DNA of 64,000 nt from Trichoplax adhaerens (lineage: Eukaryota > Animalia > Placozoa). The notes beneath the pieces were generated by a model. That model was given only the letters and a program-made list of their open reading frames with translations, did not search any database and was not told where the DNA came from. The stretch is from the NCBI RefSeq assembly GCF_000150275.1, contig NW_002060943.1, forward strand, positions 574,531 through 638,530. Reading direction: 5' to 3'. Below are positions 1 to 17,582 of this stretch, one piece after another (the first letter of the stretch is position 1; every line of letters starts with the position of its first letter). The translations under genes and the position numbers were made by a program.

Positions 1-3000
1 CATCCACAGCAAATACTACAACAACGATAGTATCTCCAACTTCAGCAACGGCATCGGCAATAGCCAGTGCAACACAAGCAAGTAATCGAGCATCAGAACA
101 TCGTCGAAGGACTGAAGATATAACTAGGAGATTTAACGAGATTAAGAATGCTAATCGAGATAGCAAGTTAATGACAAAGGCCGCTAGCAATAATGCAAAT
201 CCTAATTTAAATACGAGTAATGAAGTAGTTAAAGCCACAAATGAACAAGCAGATAGCGATAGCAAAGTCAATTCTACTCATAAACATTCTAGAGTAGTTC
301 GTCAGGCTTCCTATCAGAATGGTCAGGAAGTTAAAAAATTACCGTTAACAAGAACCGATGGCTACTCATCCATAACCGTGCTAACTCAATCTGTTGATAG
401 TTCAAGTCAACGGCAGGAAATTGTAACTTCTGGTGCAACGAAAGTAGATAGTTCTGCCAATACTAATAACAACGCCAAACATGCTACCAGCCACAAGGAT
501 AGCCTTGCTAATGAACTTATCCACTCAAATGGTAACGGAAATCATGTTAATGACAAGATGAACAATATTATTGGTGATCATCTTCAATCTGCAAAATCAG
601 CTAATTCTCATAATAGCAATCATGCTACTGCTGATAGCAGTAATATCAATGTTAGTAATGATAAACCAAATTCGACTACAATTAAAATTGCATATAGCGA
701 TCAGTCTAGCTTTCATCATACGGATAATGCTATACCGGCAGTTAATGATAGCAAGGCCAACCAGAATACTCCCAATAATTTAAGTCATAGTCACCAGAAT
801 GAAGATCAGTCCAGCAGTAATGATAATCAAAATAATCAGAAACTTGGCTCGGTATCTAATAACACTAATTCAAATAGTACTATTAATAATAATAATTCTA
901 CCCTTACTAATAACAAGACTACATCAATACCTAAAATTGGTCGAAGTAGAAAATTACCCAGTATTGATTTAGCTGTTAAGAATGTATCTCCATCAAGACC
1001 GACATCATCGACAACTTCCATCTCTTCTGTTGCTTCCGATGGTATGGCTTTACCAACATCACCAATCGAATCTCCAGTTTCTCCTGTGTTTGTAACGCCA
1101 CCATCGACACCATTTGAAATAAAAGAGTCTTCCAATTTTACTTCTCCTTTAGCAATGATGGACAATTTTGAGATATCGGAAGTGGCTGCAGAGTCACGAA
1201 TTCAGAGTCCTCCATCCATAATGATCGAGTCTCATACTGGAGCATCCTCAGTATTTACTACTGCTCCATCATCGCCTGTTCAATCGCCTGGAGAAACATC
1301 AGCTCCAAGTCCACCAAATGTCCTAATAGAGCAAAATAAATTATCAGAAAGCGAGTCACTAGGAAATAATGAATATCCTAAATTACCAGCGCCACCACCA
1401 CCTACACCAGCTCAAGAATTATCATCAGCTCCAGTTTCCGATCAAGAGATCCAGAAACCAACATCGCCTGTTACTGATCAGGAGAGTCAGAAACCAACAT
1501 CTCCTGTTACTGATCTAGAAGAAGCGAAAACAACGGGTAAAATATCCAAATATGAAGTAGCTGATTTCTTTAGTCAATTTACATCGCAATCCAGTTTCCA
1601 GCTACGTTCCAAAAGGGCAAATAGTCTATCGTTAGCGACAGGAAGGGAAGAATCACCGAATGATGATGTGAAAGCACCAGAAAATCAACGAAGACGAATG
1701 ACCACAAGTGATCCTCGTTATATTGAAAGATTCAGAAATTTAAATAGGGATTCTTCAATAGAAAATAACCAAGAACGGATTGATGCAAAATCCACATCCA
1801 GTGATGATCATGAGGAAAAAGGTAGTGAACCGAAACAAACTTTACCTCGAATAATAATTACAGCACCAGATAGTGGCGATCGGAAGAAACGCCATAATAG
1901 AGCCATGAATCCGTATCATCGACGAAATCAAAAAGCTAAAAGTAAACGATCCAAAGAGCGACGGGAGAGAATAAGGCAAAATCGTGAAGACAAGCAAAGT
2001 AGTTTATCACCTACTAGTTCAGAAGATGAAAATAATCCGGCTAAGCAAAAAGACGTAACTAATTCCGTGTCAGCGGTAAATGCTCACTTTTTAAGTGTGG
2101 ATGATAGCGATTGGGTATCAGGCTGTTTAGGTAAAGATAGTGAATCGAGCTGTGATGAACATGATGAGAAAAAGAAAAAGAAAAAGGGTAGAAAGCATAA
2201 AAAAAGTAAATCCAATAAGGAATCCAAGAAGAAAACGAAAAAATCCAATCATAAGCATGAAGATTCTATTCCGCCTATGGATAAGGTTATTATATATTGT
2301 AAAATGTCATCAAACTACTTTGATAACTATAAAGACTTTATGAGTGTAAAAATTTCTAGAATAATTATTAACGGGTAGGATAGACGTTGGAGGATAGTAG
2401 AGAAATTAGTGCTGGTAATTCATTTCTTCTAAAGAAAATAAAGAGTAATTATTAATACGATCGTCGCATACGAAATAATTTAGAAATATTGTAATACGAG
2501 TATACGATTACTTTTAACCAATTCTTTTAGGCGCTATATTCTATATAATTATGTATAGTAATTCGAGCCACAATGTCCTAAAACTCTTTAGAGAACAAAA
2601 ATATAGTTTTTAATCAAGTGCATTATACATTTAATTCATATTCATTTTCATACTTTTTGAAAATGGTAAAATATTATAAAATAGTTTAGCTAATTCTTAA
2701 TGCTATATTTGTATGCTATATAATTTAGCAAAATTAATGCGACCACTTTTAGACAATTTTTGCTAGATATTACATTAAATGCAATATTTAGCAATTTAAC
2801 TACGGTATCCTACAATTTTCACAGACGCAGAAGTTTAACATACGCGTATAATGGATTGCATTAAATATTTATTTCTAAATCCTTATTTTGATGTCTTTAA
2901 ATATTCTATTAACATCAGAATGAAGAGGATGATATTATCATACAGGAAGAATTAGTGAAAATTGAAAATAATTCAGTGGCACCAGCTGAACACCCTGATG

Positions 3001-4253
3001 TATTCTTTGATTTTCAACTTAGTAGCTCAGTAATAAAATTATTAAAGCTACTGGTCAAAGAAGAAGACATAACTGGTAACACTAAAGTCTTTAATTTAAT
3101 TGAGACGAACTTGGCTGATGAGGAAGGCTTTTATCCTTTATTGGTAACTTTACAAAATCAGGTAATTGATTCTTAACATCGTGGGTATCATTGTTTATTT
3201 TTACATTTATCAGATCAAAAATATGGATTTAATATAGTAGAATATTAGTATTGGTAATATTAGCCATTTACTGTATATAGGCAAAATGTTTATCGATAAT
3301 CATTGTCCTCTTCCTGTGTAAATCTACCTTCGTTGGCTAGTATTGAATTATATAGGAAAGGAAAGCCGATATTAGTTTAATTGCTATTAGATAAGTTGCG
3401 ATAAATTAGCGTTAGTGCTTTTTAACCAGTCTCTTCATGATGACCTTACTAAATCTACTATAGACTAAAATTCTTGATCAATATTCTTGAATTGTTAATT
3501 GATATTCGATTTTTTTATACAGTATCAAGAAATTATCCAAGATCAAAATCATAACTTATCATTAGATAAGTATGACACAATCAAGGAACAGCTAGATTTA
3601 ATTAGCAATATTCGAGAGGCTACAGATAATTACATCGCCACGGATGGTATTAGCAACGAAATTGTCCAATTTCAAAAAGCAAAGAAAATTCAAGCTGAAC
3701 TGCAAGAGGTAATTATGATTGCCGGCGTTTAATAGAAGCCATTTATGCCTAGAAAATTGTACTTTACTTTAACTAAGACGTTCTAGTAGTGTAATTGACT
3801 ATATATCTACTTCATAAAGACATCGAATCTATCTATCAGCTTTTACAACACTAAAGTAATATATCAGTCACAGTCTACTTAATATCTTTTGCTAAACTAA
3901 CGTTACATATTAATTTATCGTATATAAATTTCAAGTTCTATTGATAGGCTACCAATTATGTGTCTTTGTTTATGTATAATATTCGACATTTTATTTATCT
4001 AGACTACTGGCTATTGCCATTTAAATAGTTTATCTATCTTGTTTATGACAAGTAGCAGCTTTATCTTTTACGAAGTGATTGGTTGATATAATTTATATAG
4101 TTTTATTTATTGTATGCTTTTCTCATAGTTTCTCTGTTTTATTCTTAGCTGTTAAACAGTTGTAGATATTATTTCCATGATAAGTGTCAAAATATTATTA
4201 CCGAAGTGATTGGCCATAGTCAGCTTCCAGCAGAATATTGTACACTATTATAA
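1..4253 (+). CDS. Large low-complexity protein with conserved C-terminal helical domain and CaaX (CTLL); paralogue A, 5' end outside window
   Basis: Frame is open from window start through ORF 171-2378. Hand-spliced exons: <1-2285 (AAG|gttatt), 2919-3161, 3523-3708, 4149-4253, all GT-AG and phase 0, ending ...HSQLPAEYCTLL*. The last three exons align with the neighbouring gene's exons 16791-17021, 17135-17320 and 17487-17582. Confidence 0.8.
1431..1520 (+). repeat. Coding 36-bp (12-aa) tandem repeat, PV(S/T)DQE(I/S)QKPTS x~2.5
   Basis: PVSDQEIQKPTS-PVTDQESQKPTS-PVTDLEE is visible in both protein and DNA. Confidence 0.75.
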
Positions 4254-8366: not shown

Positions 8367-8517
8367 ATGTCAGATTATGATAAGATTCATTTTCGTGCCC
8401 CTACTCAATTGCGGAAATTACTAGTTGATTTCAGTTTACATTGCCTATATTATCAACCAAGCGATTTATACCAATTTGCTGCTTCTTATTTTCAACGGCA
8501 AGTCGAACACCAACAAG
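8367..8517 (+). CDS. Exon encoding RIIa D/D-like domain
   Basis: PTQLRKLLVDFSLHCLYYQPSDLYQFAASYFQR matches the RIIa/SPA17/CABYR/ROPN1 pattern P.gL..LL..F...vL..QP.Dl..FAa.YF. Donor CAAG|gtagga. Confidence 0.8.
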
Positions 8518-11500
8518 GTAGGACAGCAATAGTAGATGCTATTATACCTATATCGAAGAGAAGCGAATACTTATTGATTTGGTTAGGCTTAGAAAGGATA
8601 GTTTGGATTGAATTTGATATCTTGCTCGCCTTTTGGCACTAGAATAGTTACTGTATGAAAGGATGGATTATTTTAATTTTGGACTAATAATCTTAATTTT
8701 TATGATGATTGAATATACGCTAGGATTTATTATGATTGAATATTGATGACTGTGATAATATACTAGAATGATTTTGGTCACTTGTTGTCCTTCAATAACA
8801 AGATTGTTACATACGTGATTTTGGTTGTCTTTAGTTCATCTTGTTAGACCAACGGTATTTAAACGCATTCATTTTATTCATTATAAATTAGGAAATTGAA
8901 TAAGTAGCGTACAGTAGTTTAGGTAAAGAAATGTTAAAGAGTAATGGCGCTAAATTAGATTTCTATTTAGTCCTAGTTGTGATTGCACTGACAAGTTTAC
9001 GCTATATCAGTTTTCGTCCGCTTTGTTCGTAGACAATCATAGTGCTATTTTTTCTATTGCGGGTTTATTTAAGAGACGGTAGCAATTTTATATTGTTAGC
9101 CAACAATTACTGTCTATTTTTTATTCTATTCCTTTTTCATCTACACCCCAGTATAGCAACAGCGTGTTAAAAGTATGATGATGGGCTACAGTAACCCTAT
9201 TGGATTAATGGCTGTTCGTATTGCTTAGACTAATAGTGATGTTCAATACTTTTCGGCAAAGTTGTGAAACTGCGCGATCATATCTAATAGTCTACGCGAA
9301 GTTTCAATACTATGCTGGATATCAATTTAAACGGAGGATTGGATAGAAAGTAGTATTTAAAAAAATGTATCTACTAATTATATTACTGTACGTGAGTGGT
9401 GATTTACGCGTAGAAGAAAGAGTTAATAGTTGATATAAATAGTTGATATCAATATAAGTGATAGATTTTGATAGAAGATTGTCTGAAACTTATCATCATG
9501 TTGACTTGATATTTGCATAAGATACTGGATATCAATTTAGAATCATGTTGATTTAATAGAATAGTATCTACAACTTGCTGGTCATATCAACTGGATATTT
9601 GGATACTGTACGACATTTGATGTTGATTTAGATTAAAAAAAAATGTGAAATTAATGGAACATAAATTGGTTAAAACCACTTTGAACCTTTTCCAATTCTA
9701 CAAGAATATTCCATATAACTTAATTAAAATACAATTTAATACTCCTCTACCATACTCAGAATTTAAGAAACATATTAGTCTGTTATATAAAAACAGAACT
9801 TTACATAGCTGTCTGCTACTGCCTTTTACAAACAGAGTAGGAATCGGACAAGCACACTATTGCATTATGCTGGCCATCTTGATCCAAAATTACTTTATTA
9901 AGCATAAAAGACTATTCTACATCTCATCATCTTTACTCCATTCTACTGTTGCACTTTCAATACTTATTATTGCCATCATACCCCAAATTTACTATCTCTA
10001 ACGAAGAATTGGAAATATTACCGCCATTATGTAGAGACATGGAGTGCTTTTAAATTTTTGATCACGTACCATCTGAACAGAATATGATTTCGACGAGCGA
10101 TAGAGTAAACCTAATATTCTTTAGCCAAATGGAATCATTTTTCTTTCAATCATATTCTAGAATTGATAATATGGATAGACACGAATGATAGCCAACATAG
10201 TCTACCGTACTTTCTCCTATTTGAATAGTATAAATTGATTTGGCTGAGATACAGTAAGACAGAAACGATATTTTGATCGCTATTTTTCCATGGCATTTAT
10301 TTGGCAGTATCACTTAATATTGCCATTATTAACTAGTTTAAAGGCTGAAGGAATTCTATTAATGAACTGCTACCTATCGTATTTTATACTAACTTTTAGA
10401 GAAAAGTTCCATTGCCGACGGCAAAATATCGAAGCAAAATGGAACACTTTTCCCTGGGCAAAAGTGGAGAAAGGAACACAACATGTGGGCATTTCATTGC
10501 TACGTTCATAAGGATGCCAGACAAACCTTCTATGATGCCATGTATGAAAGTATTTTCAATCAGGAACTACTTATGCCTCACAGTATGGATGGATTTTACT
10601 CGTCGAAAATGACAGATATACCATTTAAAAGATATACTAGGGCAGTTTATCATGGTTATTCCCCTTTACCAGCAAATAGAGATTCATTAACACCAGTAGA
10701 AAGTAATGATATGGACGGGAACCGCTGCTATGTAAGTAGAGCTCCTATGTTCACAAAGCAAGATCATGATGGAACTATTCATGAAGGCAGTAATCAATAT
10801 CTTAAGGAAGTTTTCATAGAGAAAATTCAACAGAATATCAGTAAAGATGACGAAGAAGATCCTAATAGAAATGATCCCGTATTTCAAACTATCAGCCATC
10901 AAAACGGTGAAAGACATAATCAATATTTCTTGCTAACAGCAAGCAATACAGAGAAAAATGAGAATCAGCCATCTATTCAGAATAGACCAAAATCTCTTGA
11001 TTCGCATAAGGATATTGATCAGCAGAATGATATCCAAAGTTATGTCGACACAGATTTAAAAAGTAAATATCAAGCAGAAGCAGACCCTAAACAAAATAAA
11101 ATTCAAGATCTTACCGATACTGGAGAAGAATGTCAGTCTCTTATTGCGGCAAAGCCTACAACTAGAAGAGATGGAATTGAAATTGATAATGTTAAAATGA
11201 CGAATGAAATCGATCATTCCGATTGTAGTGATATTTCGGCAGTTAAAACCCCTGAAAAAACCACGAAGAAAATTCAAGAATCCTTTCAAATGGAGGAAAA
11301 TGAAGGAAAAGATCCTTTATCGAATAATACAAACAAGGAAATCAACGCTAAAGATTCGGCCAAGAATAAAACGAATACCAATACTGCAAAGAGAGTAGCA
11401 GCGAATGGACGGAAAACGCCATTTAAGGGCAGCCAAGGACATCGAAAAGTCAGCAACGAAGAGCCAATCTTGAAGAATCCAAAGCATCAAGGAAATCAAG

Positions 11501-14500
11501 ATGTCAAATTGCAGAGAAAGAAAGAGTATACGTCTAAGACGGTTGTTCCAGTTCAGAATGCTACCAGTAAATACAAAATCCCCAATAAATTGATCGATAG
11601 CAAGAGCAAGAAAGGAAGGCAAGATAGCGTTCAGTCCACCGATACTCTAACAACTCCATTGAATAAGAGAACTACCGGTGAAAAGGCTGAAGGAAAGAAA
11701 GAAAATCTTAAGGTAAAATGGCATAAAATCTATGAAAAAATTATTCAAATAGAAGAAGAAAAGACTTTACAAGACAAACCGAGAGAAAATACAGTTCATA
11801 AATTACCGCTGAAAAGACAAAACGGCACCGGGAAAACTCAAGGTGAGAATAAGCCAAGAAATTTATCTCTAAATGCAGGCAAGAAAGTGAATATCAAGGC
11901 ATTTGATCGAGAAATACAGCGAAAACAAGAACACTTGTCTAACAGGGAGAAAAAGCGAACGTTTAATAAAAACTATAAAAGTTTAAATCTTGAGAAAAGT
12001 CAAGATAATAACGCAAAGCAGTCTACCCCTGCAGTAGGTATAAGTAAGAATAATAATGAGAAAAAAACACTAGCTAGTAAAATAGCATTAACTAGTTCTC
12101 AGAAGCATCTTCAATCTAAATTAGAGAATAGTGATCGTCAGGCTGTATACCCTGTAAATGATCTTGAAAATACTGATAATGGCACAGAACATGATAGAGA
12201 AGAAGGAAATCTTTTAGAAAAGCCAAGTCATGTCTTGGAGGGAAGTGAAAGGGAGAACTATCGGAAAGAAGTTGTTCATGCTCACCCGTCTTCAAGTTCG
12301 TTGCTCTTGGAAGAAATAACGCAAAATGATGATATTCTATTACAAAATGAGGACAGAGAAGAAAGTGTGCGAGACTGTCCAGAAGTGGAGTCGGAGGAAA
12401 GTGAAAGGGAGAGCTATCGGAAAGATACTGTTCATGCTCACGCGTCTTCAAGTTCGTTGCTCTTGGAAGAAATAACGCAAAATGATGATACTCAATTACA
12501 AAATGGGGACAGAGAAGAAATTGTGCAAGGCTATCTAGAAGTGGAGTCGGAGGAAAATGAAAGGGAGAACTATCGGAAAGATGTTGTTCAAGCTCACGAG
12601 TCTTCAAGTTCGTTGCTCTTGGAAGAAATAACGCAAAATGACGATACGAGTATTCTATTGCAAAATGAGGACAGAAAAGAATCTGTGCGAGACTCTCTAG
12701 AAGTGGATACCCACAATTATGGAAGTAAGAATATCAATACCAATGATTCTAGCCAAGGCAGTGCATTGGAGAACACTTTCGAAAGCAGCCTTAAAGTGAA
12801 CGAAATACAAAATTTAGAGATGAAAGATAAGGGAAAAGAAGTTCTTCTTAACGTGCAAGATGACATCAAGTCAGAGCAACAACATCAATCGAATTCGTTC
12901 ATTCAGCCAGCGAAAGAGATCAATTTATTAGAGGCTAATGTAAACCATGATATCAAGCTTACTCCGCACGAAAATGAAACTTGTGTTTTGCCAAAATCTC
13001 AAGAAATTTCAAAGGTAGATGCTAAGCAGTATTTGACCATTTTAAATTCACTGAAACAAATCAACAAGACCGAACAAATCGATGAGAATAAGCCTAAATC
13101 GAAAGGAATGAAAAAGTTATCCTCTGTCTCAGGTAGTTCTATACTTCAAGAAGAAGAAGAAGACAGCATGACTCAGAAATCAAAAATGGTTAAAAAATTA
13201 CCTCATGTTCCAGTCAATTTAGAATCTAAAATGATGATGGAAAGACACAAGAAAGGTACCGGTATTGATAGGAGCCAAAATCGATTAAGTAACAAGAATG
13301 AGAATAAGTTGAAAAGTAAGGCAAATGTTGAGAATACTGCCAATGGAGGTCGTTTAGCCAAGCAGGCTAATGAGATTCTCAAAGCAAGAATTCGCACTTA
13401 TTCTGATGCTTCTCATTACAAGAAAAAGTCTACATCAGCTGGTAATGTTATGCCATCTAAAGTAGTTCAAAATAAAGATCACCCACCGAGTCATAATGAG
13501 ATGCTGCTATATATTAAGAATAAACTAATCAAGAAAGGAGAATCAATCGGTAGTAATAATCTACTGGATAAAAAGAATCCAAGTATCCATGATAACAAGA
13601 ACAGAAGCATAAATGGTGTCCAAAGTGCTAATGCGGATCAAAACTATTCCAATGGAGTAGAAAAATCGATCGGTAATCATTTCAAGAAGTCCGCAGTTAA
13701 CGATGAAACTGGAATACCAATCCGTGAAAAAGAGATAGTTAATTGTGCTCATGAAGTGATGGATGGCGAGAATTTTAATTCTAATAGTCCTAGCAATCCA
13801 AATGAACTAGCCACAATCTCCGTAATTGCAGAAACATCTAATTTAAAGAACTTAAATTCTACTTTAGCTGCAAGCGAAGATCAGCCAGGGATTATGAATA
13901 CTTTAAGCAACAATGATGGTCAAGATCAAGACAACTTACATCGCAATTTCGCAAAGGAGGACAGTACGAAGGTAGTAAACAATTTAGTTCAAACTATGGA
14001 TAAATCAGAGCAATTGATAGCGTTGATAAACAGCGATATTAGTACATTAGAGGATACCAGAAATCGGCCAGTAAAACATAATTCCTGTGTAGCAGATGTG
14101 AGAGATGCCGATAGCAATATTGCAATATCGCCAGTTGATCGCAATATCCCTATAATCCCCCTGGATAGTAAGAGTAATAAACTTGAAAGTACTCCAAAAG
14201 CAGATTTATTGCCAAAGTTTCTAGATTCGATCAAATTGACTACAGAACAGCTACCAAGTTATCAAGGCATTCACCATGGAGAATATCGCCTTGAACAGGA
14301 AAATCAGAAGCAAGTTCCAATGACGAGCTTCCATAAAAAGGATCTTTCAGAGAAATCGAGCTGCGATAGCTACAGCAATGGAACAGAACTATCCAAGGAA
14401 TTAATTCAATCTGCACCGGCAGATCCAGCATCAGCTGAGACAAAAAGCCACATGCCTTCTACGAACAATTGGATCGAGAATCTGCGAAATGCAAACATCG

Positions 14501-17500
14501 CTGATCTTCCTACCTTAAGAAGCGAAAATTTAGAAAAATGTGTCCCTTCAGCTTCTAAACATACCTGTACCGAGCTAAACTATGATAGAAATCTTGCAAG
14601 TCCTACTATAATTTCCAATGATGCAGCTGAAATAATGAATGGATCCGAGCCTAATAAGGACGTTAATCAAGTAAGATGGGAACAGAAATCTTTAACCGAT
14701 CATGATGAGGGCAAAGAAGAGCAATTCTTAGGCCAAGATAAAGAACGTTCGGATGGAGTAGAATTAGTTCGGCATCAAATTGATAGAGATCTACAGTCTA
14801 AACAAGAATTTACCCTTTCAGCTTCACCTGCAAATTCTACTAAATTTATTAGAAATATTCCCTCTACCATCCCTAATACTAGTGCAAATAGAATAGCATA
14901 TCAGACTATGATCTCAGGAGAAGGTATTAATGTAGATGATTTTAAAGACGATTATCAACCCTGCCCACTCGGTTCCTGCATAGATAATTCTTCGATCGAG
15001 AATACTTCAGTTCATGATGATGTAGTTTATGAAGTTCAAGGTAATCAAACTAGTCAAGAATAGCTAAAGTATCTTGCTGCTATAAAGAATAGTGATGCTA
15101 ATATTGATTGAATATCTTTACGTTCTGTTCAACAGGAATAAATGAGTCTGCCAAGTCCGTTGTACAAATCAGCAGAGAAATTTCAAGTAATGCCAATATT
15201 ACTCATTCGTCCTTGGAATCAGACATACTTCAACATAGTGAAGCTTCTAATGATATAGACAGGAATCAATATCTACAGCCAATTCATATGGTGGACAAGA
15301 TCGATGACGAGATTAGAAATAAGGCGTTAGGAAAATCCCAATCTCAAACTTCCGAAGGAAGCAACACTGTCGGAATAAATGATAGACAAGAAGACACAAA
15401 CTATGGGCAAAAAGGCGTTAATACAAATAACTTTATAAAAATCTCTCAAATTCAAAATGAAAATTCAAATCAGGAAGTAGGTGATACCAGGGTACAAGAA
15501 GAGAAAGAATCGAATATCAAGGCAGAAATACGGATTGAGAATACTATTAAGGTACAGATTGATGATAGGAGGGATGGCTCAATTGGAAATGAAATCAATC
15601 CTAACATTAACCTACGAGACCAGAAGCCAAGCAATCAAAAATTTCAAAAGGCAAAAGAGGCTGAGAATAATAAGCCATTGCATATTAGTTCTAATCTTGC
15701 AGTTGATGATGCATCCAAGAATAACCCAGTTTCGAATGTTGCTGAGGATAGTGAGAATAATGACATCGAAAATGTAGACATTAATGTAGAATTAATGAAT
15801 GAAGCATCTAATAAAGTTGGGGAACAGAAATTACCAACTAATATTGGTCCTAATGCAAAGACTATGAAGAAAGAAGGAAACTTAGATTTTGGGATGGATT
15901 TGAAGTTAGAATCTTATGTTCAAGACATGAAGATCAAGAAAGAAAGTGCCATCGCTTCAGCAAAAAAAGCTGTCAAGAGTTCCTACATCGATCAAAAACA
16001 AAACCAATTGGAAAGAGAGAAGATAGAGAATGTGCATGCTAACCCACATCAGGTACATAAAGAAACAGAAACAATCTTCCCTTCCACGGCGGATATACGG
16101 GTATCATCGCTTATGAAGGGGGAAAAGCAGAATGGTAACGATGAGATGGTTTCTACTGCTGCCTTGCTATTGCCTCAATGCAATAATCAAGATAGTTGTA
16201 CTGAACAGCCGAAAGAAAGCAACCATGATTCTGAGATTAAGCTGATTGAGCGAGAAAAGTACAGTAAGGAAGTGAATGATGATAATATGCTAATAAAGCA
16301 TTCATCGTACAAAGACACCATAAATACTGATATGTTAAAAGAAGATTTTTCAAGCGTGGACATTACTCAAAATAAGCAGGATCGTTGTCAAAATGATACA
16401 AGTACTAATGCTAACGATTTGGAATCAGAATCAATTGGCCAAGGTTTTCGTGATGAAGAAGAAGAGGAAGTAAGCACATCAGTAGAGAATACAAAGAAGA
16501 AACATCGTAGCCATCGTCATGGCCATAGTAAACGAAAAGATGGTAAGAAACACCGCAAAAAACATCGAAAAGAGAAAACTTCTAATTCTCATCACCATAA
16601 GGTCAGCTTAAAATAATTAGAAGTAAATCTTGTATTTCTTACAAGCTAGTCGACTTTTCTAATGGTGTATAGAAACTATGGTTTACATATTTATTATAGC
16701 TCCTGTCTGCAATATTGTTAATACAATTACAGCGTTTCTATTCTAAATTAATGATAGAAATAATTTTGAAATGCTGTACCGGTAATATAGGGAAGTCTGC
16801 TAGAATCGATCATAGAAGAAGATGAAGATGTAGCAATAGAGCCAGAAACAAGGAAATCAACTGATTTTTATGTAGAGCCTGATCATGAAGTAGCAAAACT
16901 TATAGGAAAATTAATCTGCAATGAAGAAATCGATGAAGACAGCGATGTTGAGCAAGATATTGAATCTATTATTTACGATGATGAAATATTTTACCCACTA
17001 ATTAATGCCTTAGTCTCAAAGGTAGGATATCATTGTTAAAAAAATTAATAAGTAAACAGTTAAAATTGTAAAATCATAAAACATTCGAACGCATTGATTT
17101 TAATATAGCATGCTCTTATGTTTTGTATTATTAGTATGAAAGCATCGTTGAGAATAAATTAAGCGATTTTTCCAGCAATGATCAAGAACTTATTGAAGGA
17201 CAGTTTCAATCATTTCAGGAAATATTAGCTACAGCAGATAAATGTTGGTCAGCATACCATGCTGGTAATGATTTTGAGGTTTTAGAGAATATCAGGAGAC
17301 TTAAAAGCACATTAATTGAGGTAAGTTGACGACCAAAAAACTAATCAATTCGACTAGCTATTGAACCATTTACGTACTTTATTAGTAATGTTAGAAAGTG
17401 AAAACGATTTAACATGGTCTAGTTGTAAGAAAATTTTCTTAACCTTGATCTTACTGAAGTTGCGAATGGCTCTATTCCATTTGTAGTTGATAGATGAAAA

Positions 17501-17582
17501 TTATATCCATCAAGATGGCCTTAGTATAATTAGTAATACTATTGGAAAATCTCGTGTGCCGAAGAATTGTATAATTTTATAA
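8367..17582 (+). CDS. ~2256-aa protein: N-terminal RIIa (PKA-RII dimerisation/docking)-like domain, long disordered body, conserved C-terminal domain, CaaX (CIIL); paralogue B
   Basis: Exons 8367-8517, 10400-15040, 15136-16601, 16791-17021, 17135-17320, 17487-17582. All GT-AG with matching phases (1,1,0,0,0); total 6771 nt = 2257 codons with no internal stop. A TACTAAC branch-like motif precedes the 10400 acceptor. Confidence 0.8.
12238..12707 (+). repeat. Coding tandem repeat, 3 x 156 bp (52 aa)
   Basis: Three copies of E.SERE.YRK..V.AH.SSSSLLLEEITQNDD..LQN.DREE.V....EVES at 156-bp spacing, highly similar at DNA level. Confidence 0.9.

What the first reader, a model, noticed from the sequence alone, without database searches (positions are those of the whole stretch)
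8367..17582. RIIa dimerisation/docking domain combined with a C-terminal CaaX lipid anchor in one ~2250-aa protein
Seen: the RIIa-like exon (8367-8517, phase 1) splices in frame to 10400 (G|AG AAA AGT...), and the chain ends in CIIL. Established: RIIa D/D domains dimerise and bind AKAP amphipathic helices; non-PKA carriers such as SPA17, CABYR and ROPN1/ROPN1L are mostly small ciliary or flagellar proteins. Inference: this could be a dimeric, flexible tether linking AKAP-bearing structures (for example axoneme or ciliary base) to a membrane, or a competitor of PKA anchoring. I know of no RIIa+CaaX protein.
Basis: partly seen in the sequence, partly recalled or inferred. Interest (0 to 1): 0.8.

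Follow-up and report, generated by a model that had tools for sequence, protein, structure and literature searches.

The report
Lipid-anchored giant protein with RIIa head
In the placozoan Trichoplax, one gene most likely encodes a 2256-residue, largely disordered protein with a PKA-RII-type dimerisation/docking domain at its start and a geranylgeranylation signal (CIIL) at its end, a combination not described before but so far found only in Trichoplax and never tested at the bench.

Summary
The window is Trichoplax adhaerens, not human. Exon 8367-8517 encodes an RIIa docking/dimerisation domain: Pfam 25.8 bits against a cut-off of 22.4, best solved-structure match PKA RIIalpha D/D, confident helix-loop-helix model. 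Its donor joins in frame to the acceptor at 10400, and the chain ends CIIL at 17568-17579.

The same 2256-aa model already exists in GenBank as an unnamed hypothetical protein of Trichoplax sp. H2 (TrispH2_006741), made by an evidence-based pipeline. The T. adhaerens model (TRIADDRAFT_51309) starts at an internal Met and lacks the RIIa exon. In the full-length protein RIIa falls below Pfam's cut-off (18.9 bits), which may be why it carries no annotation.

Apart from RIIa the protein is an orphan. Three word searches and a full HMMER scan of 1.84 billion representatives found only itself. A tandem paralogue upstream shares the polybasic stretch, the C-terminal module with the same intron phases, and a CaaL box (CTLL), but shows no RIIa.

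The likeliest reading is a dimeric, geranylgeranyl-anchored long tether with an R2D2-type docking head. Splicing, prenylation, dimerisation, partner and location are all inferred. I found no direct transcript. The scan had already noted the tandem pair on this same stretch. It is a new variant of a known kind, of moderate interest.

The parts
8367..8517 (+). Exon 1: start codon plus an R2D2-type RIIa dimerisation/docking domain (residues about 7-47); it ends in phase 1
   Evidence: Pfam PF02197 at 25.8 bits, above the 22.4 cut-off. The best solved-structure match is PKA RIIalpha D/D, E 2.8e-4, without gaps from residue 7. The AF2 model has pLDDT 87.5 with helices 13-29 and 34-49. Top Foldseek hits are RIIalpha D/D chains, TM 0.73 and rmsd 1.2 A. 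It is 31-37% identical to four other Trichoplax RIIa exons.
8518..10399 (+). Intron 1 (1882 nt), much longer than introns 2 to 5 (95-189 nt)
   Evidence: Donor AAG|GTAGGA and acceptor with TACTAAC followed by TTTTAG. Composition is non-coding: GC about 0.25-0.37 and no A-rich sense skew. There is no protein-like alternative acceptor, no Rfam hit and no notable repeat.
10400..15040 (+). Exon 2 (4641 nt, phase 1 to 1): the ~190-aa region after RIIa with no known relative, then a long hydrophilic region that is probably disordered
   Evidence: Open for 1546 codons with no Pfam family. It is 100% identical to TRIADDRAFT_51309. A HMMER scan of its first 186 aa against 1.84e9 representatives found only itself. 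The AF2 single-sequence model has pLDDT 38.
12237..12707 (+). Three tandem copies of a 156-nt (52-aa) acidic, serine-rich repeat inside exon 2
   Evidence: Tandem Repeats Finder: period 156, 3.0 copies, 88% matches. The repeat is visible in the translation.
15136..16601 (+). Exon 3: more hydrophilic, low-complexity sequence
   Evidence: Translation; part of the public models.
16494..16577 (+). Polybasic K/R/H stretch of 28 aa just before the C-terminal module; possible nuclear localisation signal or membrane-binding patch
   Evidence: Coordinates. The paralogue has an equivalent stretch at window 2169-2258, also just before its C-terminal module.
16791..17021 (+). Exon 4: first part of the C-terminal module. 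It holds the conserved amphipathic helix VAKLIGKLICNE (16890-16925) and the FYPL motif
   Evidence: 32% identical to paralogue exon 2919-3161. Only these two copies exist in the genome. It holds the only match to the loose AKAP-helix pattern in the protein.
17135..17320 (+). Exon 5: second part of the C-terminal module, 62 codons
   Evidence: Same length and same phase-0 boundaries as paralogue exon 3523-3708, 16% identity.
17487..17582 (+). Exon 6: end of the C-terminal module, CaaX box CIIL (17568-17579) and stop (17580-17582)
   Evidence: Translation. It is 32% identical to the paralogue's last exon 4149-4253, which ends CTLL; the Cys and the final Leu are invariant.
1..4253 (+). 3' part of the upstream tandem paralogue. 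Its large exon starts about 1.2 kb before the window and ends at 2285; then come exons 2919-3161, 3523-3708 and 4149-4253. Same polybasic stretch, C-terminal module and CaaL plan, but no RIIa
   Evidence: The H2 model of 1505 aa ends at the CTLL stop. There is no other RIIa match on this contig at E<=10.

Best explanation
One Trichoplax gene of six exons (8367-17582) encodes a 2256-residue protein with four parts. (1) An N-terminal RII-type (R2D2-class) docking/dimerisation domain. (2) About 2000 residues of hydrophilic S/K/E/N/D-rich sequence, probably disordered, that includes a threefold 52-aa repeat. (3) A polybasic stretch followed by a C-terminal module of about 170 residues, shared only with the neighbouring paralogue. 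(4) A CaaL box (CIIL).

Proposed mechanism. GGTase-I geranylgeranylates the Cys, the -IIL tripeptide is cleaved and the new end is methylated, so the C-terminus sits in a membrane. The N-terminal domains of two chains pair into the X-type four-helix bundle. The groove of that bundle docks an amphipathic helix of an AKAP-like partner, or the head pairs with another R2D2 protein. The result is a dimeric, lipid-anchored, very long flexible tether or scaffold.

Shown here: homology and fold of the RIIa domain, the CaaL motif and its conservation in the paralogue, splice-site and frame compatibility, the identical public H2 model, and the presence of prenylation enzymes in the genome. Inferred only: the actual splicing in RNA, dimerisation, helix docking, prenylation, and which membrane.
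For: Gene model: donor, acceptor, phase, and the open frame starting 7 nt before the acceptor. No alternative coding continuation lies in the intron. The H2 model P0002 carries the same junction and the same CIIL end. That model came from Maker with Trinity and Cufflinks transcripts, and the shorter T. adhaerens UniProt entries were among its protein evidence, so the 5' extension did not come from that entry. No gene is annotated between the paralogue and exon 1 in H2.

RIIa: Pfam above its cut-off; gapless alignment to RIIalpha residues 2-42; confident helix-loop-helix model that superposes on RIIalpha D/D at rmsd 1.0-1.2 A. The loop reads P-S-D-L, which fits Pxx[L,I,V], and helix II has the YF motif; these are the R2D2 signatures of PMC8339350. 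The domain sits at the extreme N-terminus, as in RII.

CaaX: CIIL here and CTLL in the paralogue, within a last exon that is otherwise 32% identical, and identical in H2. The genome has three prenyltransferase beta-subunit loci and an ICMT gene.

Real coding gene under constraint: 0.44% substitutions in exons against 0.72% in flanks and introns between H1 and H2, with 14 of 30 exon changes non-synonymous. No transmembrane-like segment was found.
Against: I saw no transcript or peptide spanning the 8517/10400 junction. The H2 model may owe exon 1 to an ab initio predictor that uses the same signals I inspected. The JGI model of this very genome starts at Met 10483. Intron 1 is ten to twenty times longer than the gene's other introns. 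The paralogue has no RIIa exon, so RIIa is not an ancestral part of this gene pair.

In the full-length H2 protein RIIa scores 18.9 bits, under Pfam's cut-off. The residues matching the AKAP-anchoring Ile3 and Ile5 of RIIalpha are Phe and Ala (Val in H2), and the Gly that starts helix I is Gln, so AKAP-type docking may be weak or altered. No relative outside Trichoplax H1 and H2 was found, so there is no evolutionary test of the architecture.
Confidence: 0.6

Rival explanations
1. Exon 1 is not part of the main product. It is either a separate short RIIa gene (an RIIAD1-like small protein, for instance the 91-codon read-through frame 8367-8642) or a rarely used alternative 5' exon, and the main protein starts at Met 10483 as in the JGI model. 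On this reading there is no RIIa+CaaX protein, or only a minor isoform.
For: The public T. adhaerens model starts at 10483. Intron 1 is 1882 nt against 95-189 nt for the others. The paralogue lacks RIIa. A 91-aa open frame exists without splicing. No transcript was seen here.
Against: The read-through tail after the donor is hydrophobic, Trp-rich junk in non-coding composition. The frame upstream of Met 10483 opens exactly at a strong acceptor. Phase and frame match. H2's evidence-based model makes the join even though the shorter T. adhaerens UniProt entries were in its evidence set. H2 annotates no separate gene there.
Confidence: 0.2
2. The architecture is right but the target membrane is the nuclear envelope. 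The conserved polybasic stretch acts as a nuclear localisation signal, and together with the prenylated end it places the protein on the inner nuclear membrane. This is how lamins and Drosophila Kugelkern are placed (my own knowledge, not tested here). The RIIa head would then organise something at the nuclear periphery rather than in cilia.
For: A 28-aa K/R/H cluster lies directly before the C-terminal module in both paralogues. Its distance from the CaaX box, about 170 residues, is similar to that in lamins (my own knowledge).
Against: The box ends in Leu (geranylgeranyl type), whereas lamin-type boxes end in Met or Ser (farnesyl type; established knowledge). Long polybasic runs also bind acidic lipids. 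No location data exist.
Confidence: 0.25
3. The RIIa head serves only to pair chains, as a homodimer or a heterodimer with other Trichoplax R2D2 proteins such as the SPA17-like one, and does not dock AKAP-type helices. The protein would then be a lipid-anchored dimer without a PKA-anchoring connection.
For: The positions of the AKAP-anchoring Ile3 and Ile5 are Phe and Ala/Val. SPA17 alone binds AKAP18 weakly and needs to heterodimerise with ROPN1L (PMC8339350). Trichoplax has at least five other RIIa exons.
Against: The hydrophobic core and groove positions align without gaps to RIIalpha at 36-40% identity. Phe and Val are still hydrophobic.
Confidence: 0.3
4. The C-terminal CIIL is a chance tetrapeptide and the protein is soluble.
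For: No biochemical evidence. Only two paralogues are available for comparison.
Against: Cys at -4 and Leu at the last position are invariant between paralogues whose last exons are only 32% identical, and both stops fall exactly four codons after the Cys. The enzymes are present in the genome.
Confidence: 0.1

Closest known systems
R2D2 proteins: non-kinase carriers of an RII-type D/D domain (SPA17, ROPN1, ROPN1L, CABYR, RIIAD1, CATIP; PMC8339350)
   Same: N-terminal RIIa domain with the Pxx[L,I,V] loop and the YF motif. No cyclic-nucleotide-binding domains. Found in an animal that moves by cilia.
   Different: Those proteins are small (roughly 90-500 aa) and soluble or axoneme-bound, and the survey describes none with a lipid anchor. 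This one has 2256 aa, is probably mostly disordered, ends in CaaL, and shares no similarity with any of them outside the D/D domain.
PKA regulatory subunit RIIalpha, D/D domain (PDB 2izy, 4zp3, 2hwn, 1r2a)
   Same: Best match in both sequence and model: 36-40% identity, rmsd 1.0-1.2 A over about 40 residues, same position at the chain start.
   Different: No inhibitor site and no cNMP-binding domains. Ile3 and Ile5 are replaced by Phe and Ala/Val.
Lipid-anchored AKAPs such as AKAP7/AKAP18alpha (myristoyl and palmitoyl) and AKAP12 (own knowledge)
   Same: They couple the D/D-helix docking system to a membrane through a lipid.
   Different: There the lipid is on the helix-bearing anchor protein and the D/D is on the soluble partner. 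Here the polarity is reversed: the D/D bearer itself carries the predicted lipid.
CaaL-box substrates of GGTase-I (Rho/Rac/Rap GTPases, FBXL2; own knowledge)
   Same: A C-terminal Cys-aliphatic-aliphatic-Leu with some basic residues just upstream.
   Different: No GTPase or F-box domain. The box follows an orphan ~170-aa module at the end of a giant disordered chain.
Disordered, lineage-restricted proteins of the nuclear envelope with a nuclear localisation signal and a CaaX box (lamin tails, Drosophila Kugelkern; own knowledge)
   Same: A polybasic cluster followed, some 150-200 residues later, by a prenylation box.
   Different: No sequence similarity was found (Pfam). The box is of the geranylgeranyl type. 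An RIIa head is present.

Membership tests
RIIa / PKA-R-like D/D domain (Pfam PF02197) | Score above the Pfam gathering cut-off | tested here: met
   The exon alone scores 25.8 bits against 22.4, and 25.0 bits in the six-frame genome scan. Caveat: 18.9 bits, below the cut-off, when the whole 2256-aa H2 protein is scanned.
RIIa / PKA-R-like D/D domain (Pfam PF02197) | Helix-loop-helix of about 40 residues that superposes on solved D/D domains | tested here: met
   AF2 pLDDT 87.5 with two helices. The top 10 Foldseek hits are all RIIalpha D/D chains, TM 0.69-0.73, rmsd 1.0-1.9 A, prob 0.99-1.0; E-values are weak (0.065-0.16) because the domain is so short. The model's alignment consisted of RIIa exons, so this is not fully independent of the sequence match.
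R2D2 (type II) class of D/D domains, as defined in PMC8339350 | Pxx[L,I,V] loop between the helices instead of PxxP; YF motif in helix II; N-terminal strand rather than a helix | tested here: met
   The loop reads P-S-D-L and helix II contains S-Y-F (alignments). Residues 1-12 are non-helical in the model. The Gly at the start of helix I is replaced by Gln.
R2D2 (type II) class of D/D domains, as defined in PMC8339350 | Dimerises and binds an AKAP amphipathic helix; in RII this needs Ile3 and Ile5 | not testable with these tools
   The equivalent residues are Phe9 and Ala11 (Val11 in H2). No chain-pair modelling or binding assay was available.
Orthologue of a named R2D2 protein (SPA17, ROPN1L, CABYR, RIIAD1, CATIP) | Similarity beyond the D/D domain (IQ motif, ropporin C-terminal region and so on) | tested here: not met
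   No Pfam family in exons 2 to 6. The 186 aa after RIIa match nothing among 1.84e9 representatives or in the PDB.
CaaX-box prenylated proteins (GGTase-I substrates) | Cys at -4, two mostly aliphatic residues, Leu as the last residue | tested here: met
   CIIL followed by the stop at 17568-17582.
CaaX-box prenylated proteins (GGTase-I substrates) | The box is conserved in relatives | tested here: met
   The paralogue ends CTLL and the H2 orthologue ends CIIL. Only these relatives exist for comparison.
CaaX-box prenylated proteins (GGTase-I substrates) | The organism has the modifying enzymes | tested here: met
   Three prenyltransferase beta-subunit loci (PF00432) and one ICMT locus (PF04140) in the same genome. 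I did not assign which locus is GGTase-I, and Rce1 was not searched.
CaaX-box prenylated proteins (GGTase-I substrates) | The lipid is actually attached | not testable with these tools
   Needs metabolic labelling or mass spectrometry.
AKAP (A-kinase anchoring protein) | A 14-18-residue amphipathic helix that fits the RII-binding pattern | tested here: inconclusive
   There is one pattern match in the protein (VAKLIGKLICNE, exon 4) and one at the homologous place in the paralogue, but one match is what shuffled sequence gives (mean 1.17).

The most novel reading that the evidence does not exclude
The two tandem genes form a self-contained, membrane-anchored docking system. On this reading the conserved amphipathic helix in the C-terminal module of both paralogues (VAKLIGKLICNE and VIKLLKLLVKEE) is an AKAP-type helix. 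The RIIa head of the long protein would then dock back onto the membrane-proximal module of its own kind or of the RIIa-less paralogue, closing 2000-residue loops or building a network on a membrane. That would be a prenylated protein acting as both AKAP and D/D bearer, evolved de novo in placozoans.
Probability: 0.07. Interest if true: 0.75.

Novelty: new variant of a known kind. Interest (0 to 1): 0.45.

Why it matters
RII-type docking domains outside PKA are known as parts of small ciliary and flagellar proteins. The membrane link in the AKAP system is normally supplied by the anchoring protein, not by the bearer of the docking domain.

A giant, disordered, geranylgeranylated bearer would reverse that polarity. 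It would show the D/D module being recruited by exon gain into a young, lineage-specific gene in one of the simplest animals. That bears on how compartmentalised signalling scaffolds diversified early in animal evolution.

In practice it also corrects the T. adhaerens gene model TRIADDRAFT_51309, which lacks 78 N-terminal residues. It puts a domain name on two 'hypothetical' entries that automatic Pfam annotation leaves blank.

Tried and rejected
- **Relatives of exon 2.** The word search found only the protein's own cluster.
- **Relatives of residues 1-180 and 2060-2256 of the public H2 protein.** Both word searches found only itself. The second did not even recover the known paralogue, so that tool is too insensitive here.
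- **Full HMMER scan.** The 186 aa after RIIa against 1.84 billion representatives gave only itself.
- **ESM Atlas.** The post-RIIa region gave START-domain clusters at 0.94, but with recognition 2084 (below 2300) and 157-166 shared features (below 170), and without Pfam support. I treat this as noise. Exon 4 gave no usable hit.
- **Solved-structure searches.** Profiles of exons 4 and 5 and the post-RIIa region gave nothing below E 0.19.
- **Single-sequence AF2 of the post-RIIa region.** pLDDT 38, so uninformative.
- **Literature.** Searches for the gene and protein identifiers and for RIIa with CaaX found nothing relevant. The supplements of the H2 genome paper do not mention the gene. The Trichoplax proteome paper is not held.
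- **Other features near the gene.** An Rfam scan and a repeat scan of the intergenic region and the intron were empty.
- **H1 against H2 divergence as a test of exon 1.** One substitution in 151 nt gives no power.
- I did not build, search or fold the joined spliced protein of this window. Exons were used one by one by reference, and the public proteins P0001 and P0002 stood in for the whole chain. For that reason, and because both public proteins exceed the 1200-residue limit, the three-exon C-terminal module was not folded.
Full report
**Identity of the window.** Exon 2 is 100% identical to TRIADDRAFT_51309 of Trichoplax adhaerens. The window is contig C1414:574531-638530 of that genome. It is not human sequence, so the operators' restriction on human contigs does not apply.

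**The observation.**
- Exon 1 begins at the first ATG of its frame (8367), four codons after a stop, and encodes 50 residues plus one base.
- Its donor is AAG|GTAGGA, identical to the donor of intron 4.
- The acceptor at 10399|10400 is preceded by TACTAAC and a T-rich run, and lies 7 nt after the last in-frame stop.
- Phase 1 on both sides gives the codon GAG and runs on into a 1546-codon open exon.
- None of the 99 other AG sites in the intron opens more than 87 codons, and those read as junk. The intron has non-coding composition.
- Exons 2 to 6 are those of the public JGI model, which ends CIIL.
- The six exons sum to 2256 codons.

Each was handled by reference.

**Independent support for the join.** The 90% cluster of TRIADDRAFT_51309 has a second member, TrispH2_006741 (RDD40912.1) of Trichoplax sp. 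H2. It is 2256 aa long, 78 residues more than the JGI model. The H2 gene spans 9217 nt, and no gene is annotated between it and the upstream paralogue.

The H2 annotation used Maker with Augustus and GeneMark, Trinity and Cufflinks transcripts, and a protein set that included the UniProt entries of T. adhaerens. The shorter JGI protein would have been in that evidence set, so the 5' extension must have come from transcripts or from an ab initio predictor. I cannot tell which. No transcript was seen here, and this is the main remaining weakness.

**The RIIa domain.**
- The exon alone scores 25.8 bits against PF02197 (cut-off 22.4).
- Within the whole H2 protein it scores 18.9 bits, below the cut-off. 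That may be why both public entries carry no Pfam domain.
- Against solved structures the best matches are all PKA RIIalpha D/D domains (E 2.8e-4). They align without gaps from residue 7 of the exon to residue 2 of RIIalpha. SPA17, CATIP, ROPN1L and RSP7 follow.
- An AF2 model built on an alignment with five other Trichoplax RIIa exons has pLDDT 87.5 and two helices. It superposes on RIIalpha D/D at rmsd 1.0-1.2 A and TM 0.73.
- By the criteria of Dahlin et al. (PMC8339350) the loop P-S-D-L and the YF motif place it in the R2D2 (type II) class.
- The positions of the AKAP-anchoring Ile3 and Ile5 are Phe and Ala (Val in H2), so docking strength is uncertain.

**The rest of the protein.**
- Exons 2 and 3 are hydrophilic and rich in S, K, E, N and D. 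They have no transmembrane-like segment, and exons 2 to 6 have no Pfam family. Exon 2 carries a threefold 156-nt repeat.
- The first 186 residues after RIIa look less biased, but they have no relative in 1.84 billion representatives or in the PDB, and they fold with pLDDT 38.
- Between H1 and H2, exons differ at 0.44% of sites and non-coding sequence at 0.72%. Fourteen of 30 exon changes are non-synonymous, which points to moderate purifying selection.

**The C-terminal end and the paralogue.** The gene immediately upstream has a large exon that starts 1.2 kb before the window, and its H2 model is 1505 aa. It has the same plan at its 3' end:
- a polybasic stretch at the end of the large exon;
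- three short exons with the same phase-0 boundaries;
- a middle exon of exactly 62 codons;
- 32%, 16% and 32% identity across the three exons;
- the end CTLL.

Only these two copies of the module exist in the genome. The Cys and the final Leu of the box are invariant, which argues that the box is used. A final Leu predicts geranylgeranylation (established knowledge). Three prenyltransferase beta-subunit loci and an ICMT gene are present. The paralogue shows no RIIa match, and its apparent first exon is unrelated. RIIa was therefore gained by this copy or lost by the other.

**Interpretation.** The best-supported reading is a dimeric, geranylgeranyl-anchored, very long flexible protein whose free end is an R2D2-type docking head. 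Four things remain open:
- **Which membrane.** The conserved polybasic stretch could be a nuclear localisation signal, which gives a lamin- or Kugelkern-like nuclear-envelope rival.
- **Whether the head docks AKAP helices** or only pairs chains, possibly with other R2D2 proteins, as SPA17 does with ROPN1L.
- **Whether exon 1 is constitutive.**
- **A weak lead on self-docking.** The only match to the loose AKAP-helix pattern in each paralogue falls on the homologous conserved helix of the C-terminal module, but one match is what chance gives.

**Novelty.** The sequence is public but unnamed. I found no paper that mentions it, no description of an RIIa domain combined with a prenylation box, and no relative outside Trichoplax. 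It is a new domain architecture for a known module in a lineage-restricted gene: a new variant of a known kind, of moderate interest, pending a transcript and any biochemistry.

The scan had already noted the tandem pair and the hidden CTLL exon on this same stretch. I re-derived both here.

Noticed in passing
G000:C1411:1741750-1741860, 1751479-1751574, 1760155-1760265 (L002, L005, L004): Three RIIa exons lie in tandem about 9 kb apart on another contig, each at the start of an open frame followed by acidic, serine-rich sequence. No cNMP-binding match at E<=1e-5 is listed on that contig, so they look like a local expansion of non-kinase R2D2-type genes. They are the closest in-genome relatives of exon 1 at 31-34% identity, similar to the SPA17-like exon at 37%.
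   Followed up: partly
G000:C1411:696258-696359 (L001) and G000:C1413:9198890-9198991 (L003): L001 reads like the SPA17 orthologue; that assignment rests on my recollection of the SPA17 sequence, not on a search. L003 reads like a PKA RI-type D/D, with a cNMP-binding exon 3.6 kb downstream. I did not identify a clear PKA RII gene with both RIIa and cNMP domains.
   Followed up: partly
window 10400-15040: Exon 2 is symmetric: phase 1 at both ends and 4641 nt, which is 3 x 1547. Skipping it would keep the RIIa head, the C-terminal module and the CaaX box in frame, giving an isoform of about 709 aa.
   Followed up: no
window 8398: The only H1/H2 difference in exon 1 (C to T, Ala11 to Val) falls on the residue that aligns with Ile5 of RIIalpha, one of the two AKAP-anchoring isoleucines.
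   Followed up: partly
window 10402-10959: ESM Atlas places the region after RIIa nearest to START-domain clusters (0.94), but with low recognition and too few shared features. Pfam and the PDB give nothing.
   Followed up: partly
L009:20015-27378 (H2), i.e. just downstream of window 17582 on the minus strand: The next gene downstream is an ordinary FGGY-family carbohydrate kinase (PF00370 and PF02782) on the opposite strand.
   Followed up: no
G000:C1414:about 562200-563100 (L010): There is a run of N (an assembly gap or a withheld stretch) about 12 kb upstream of the window.
   Followed up: no
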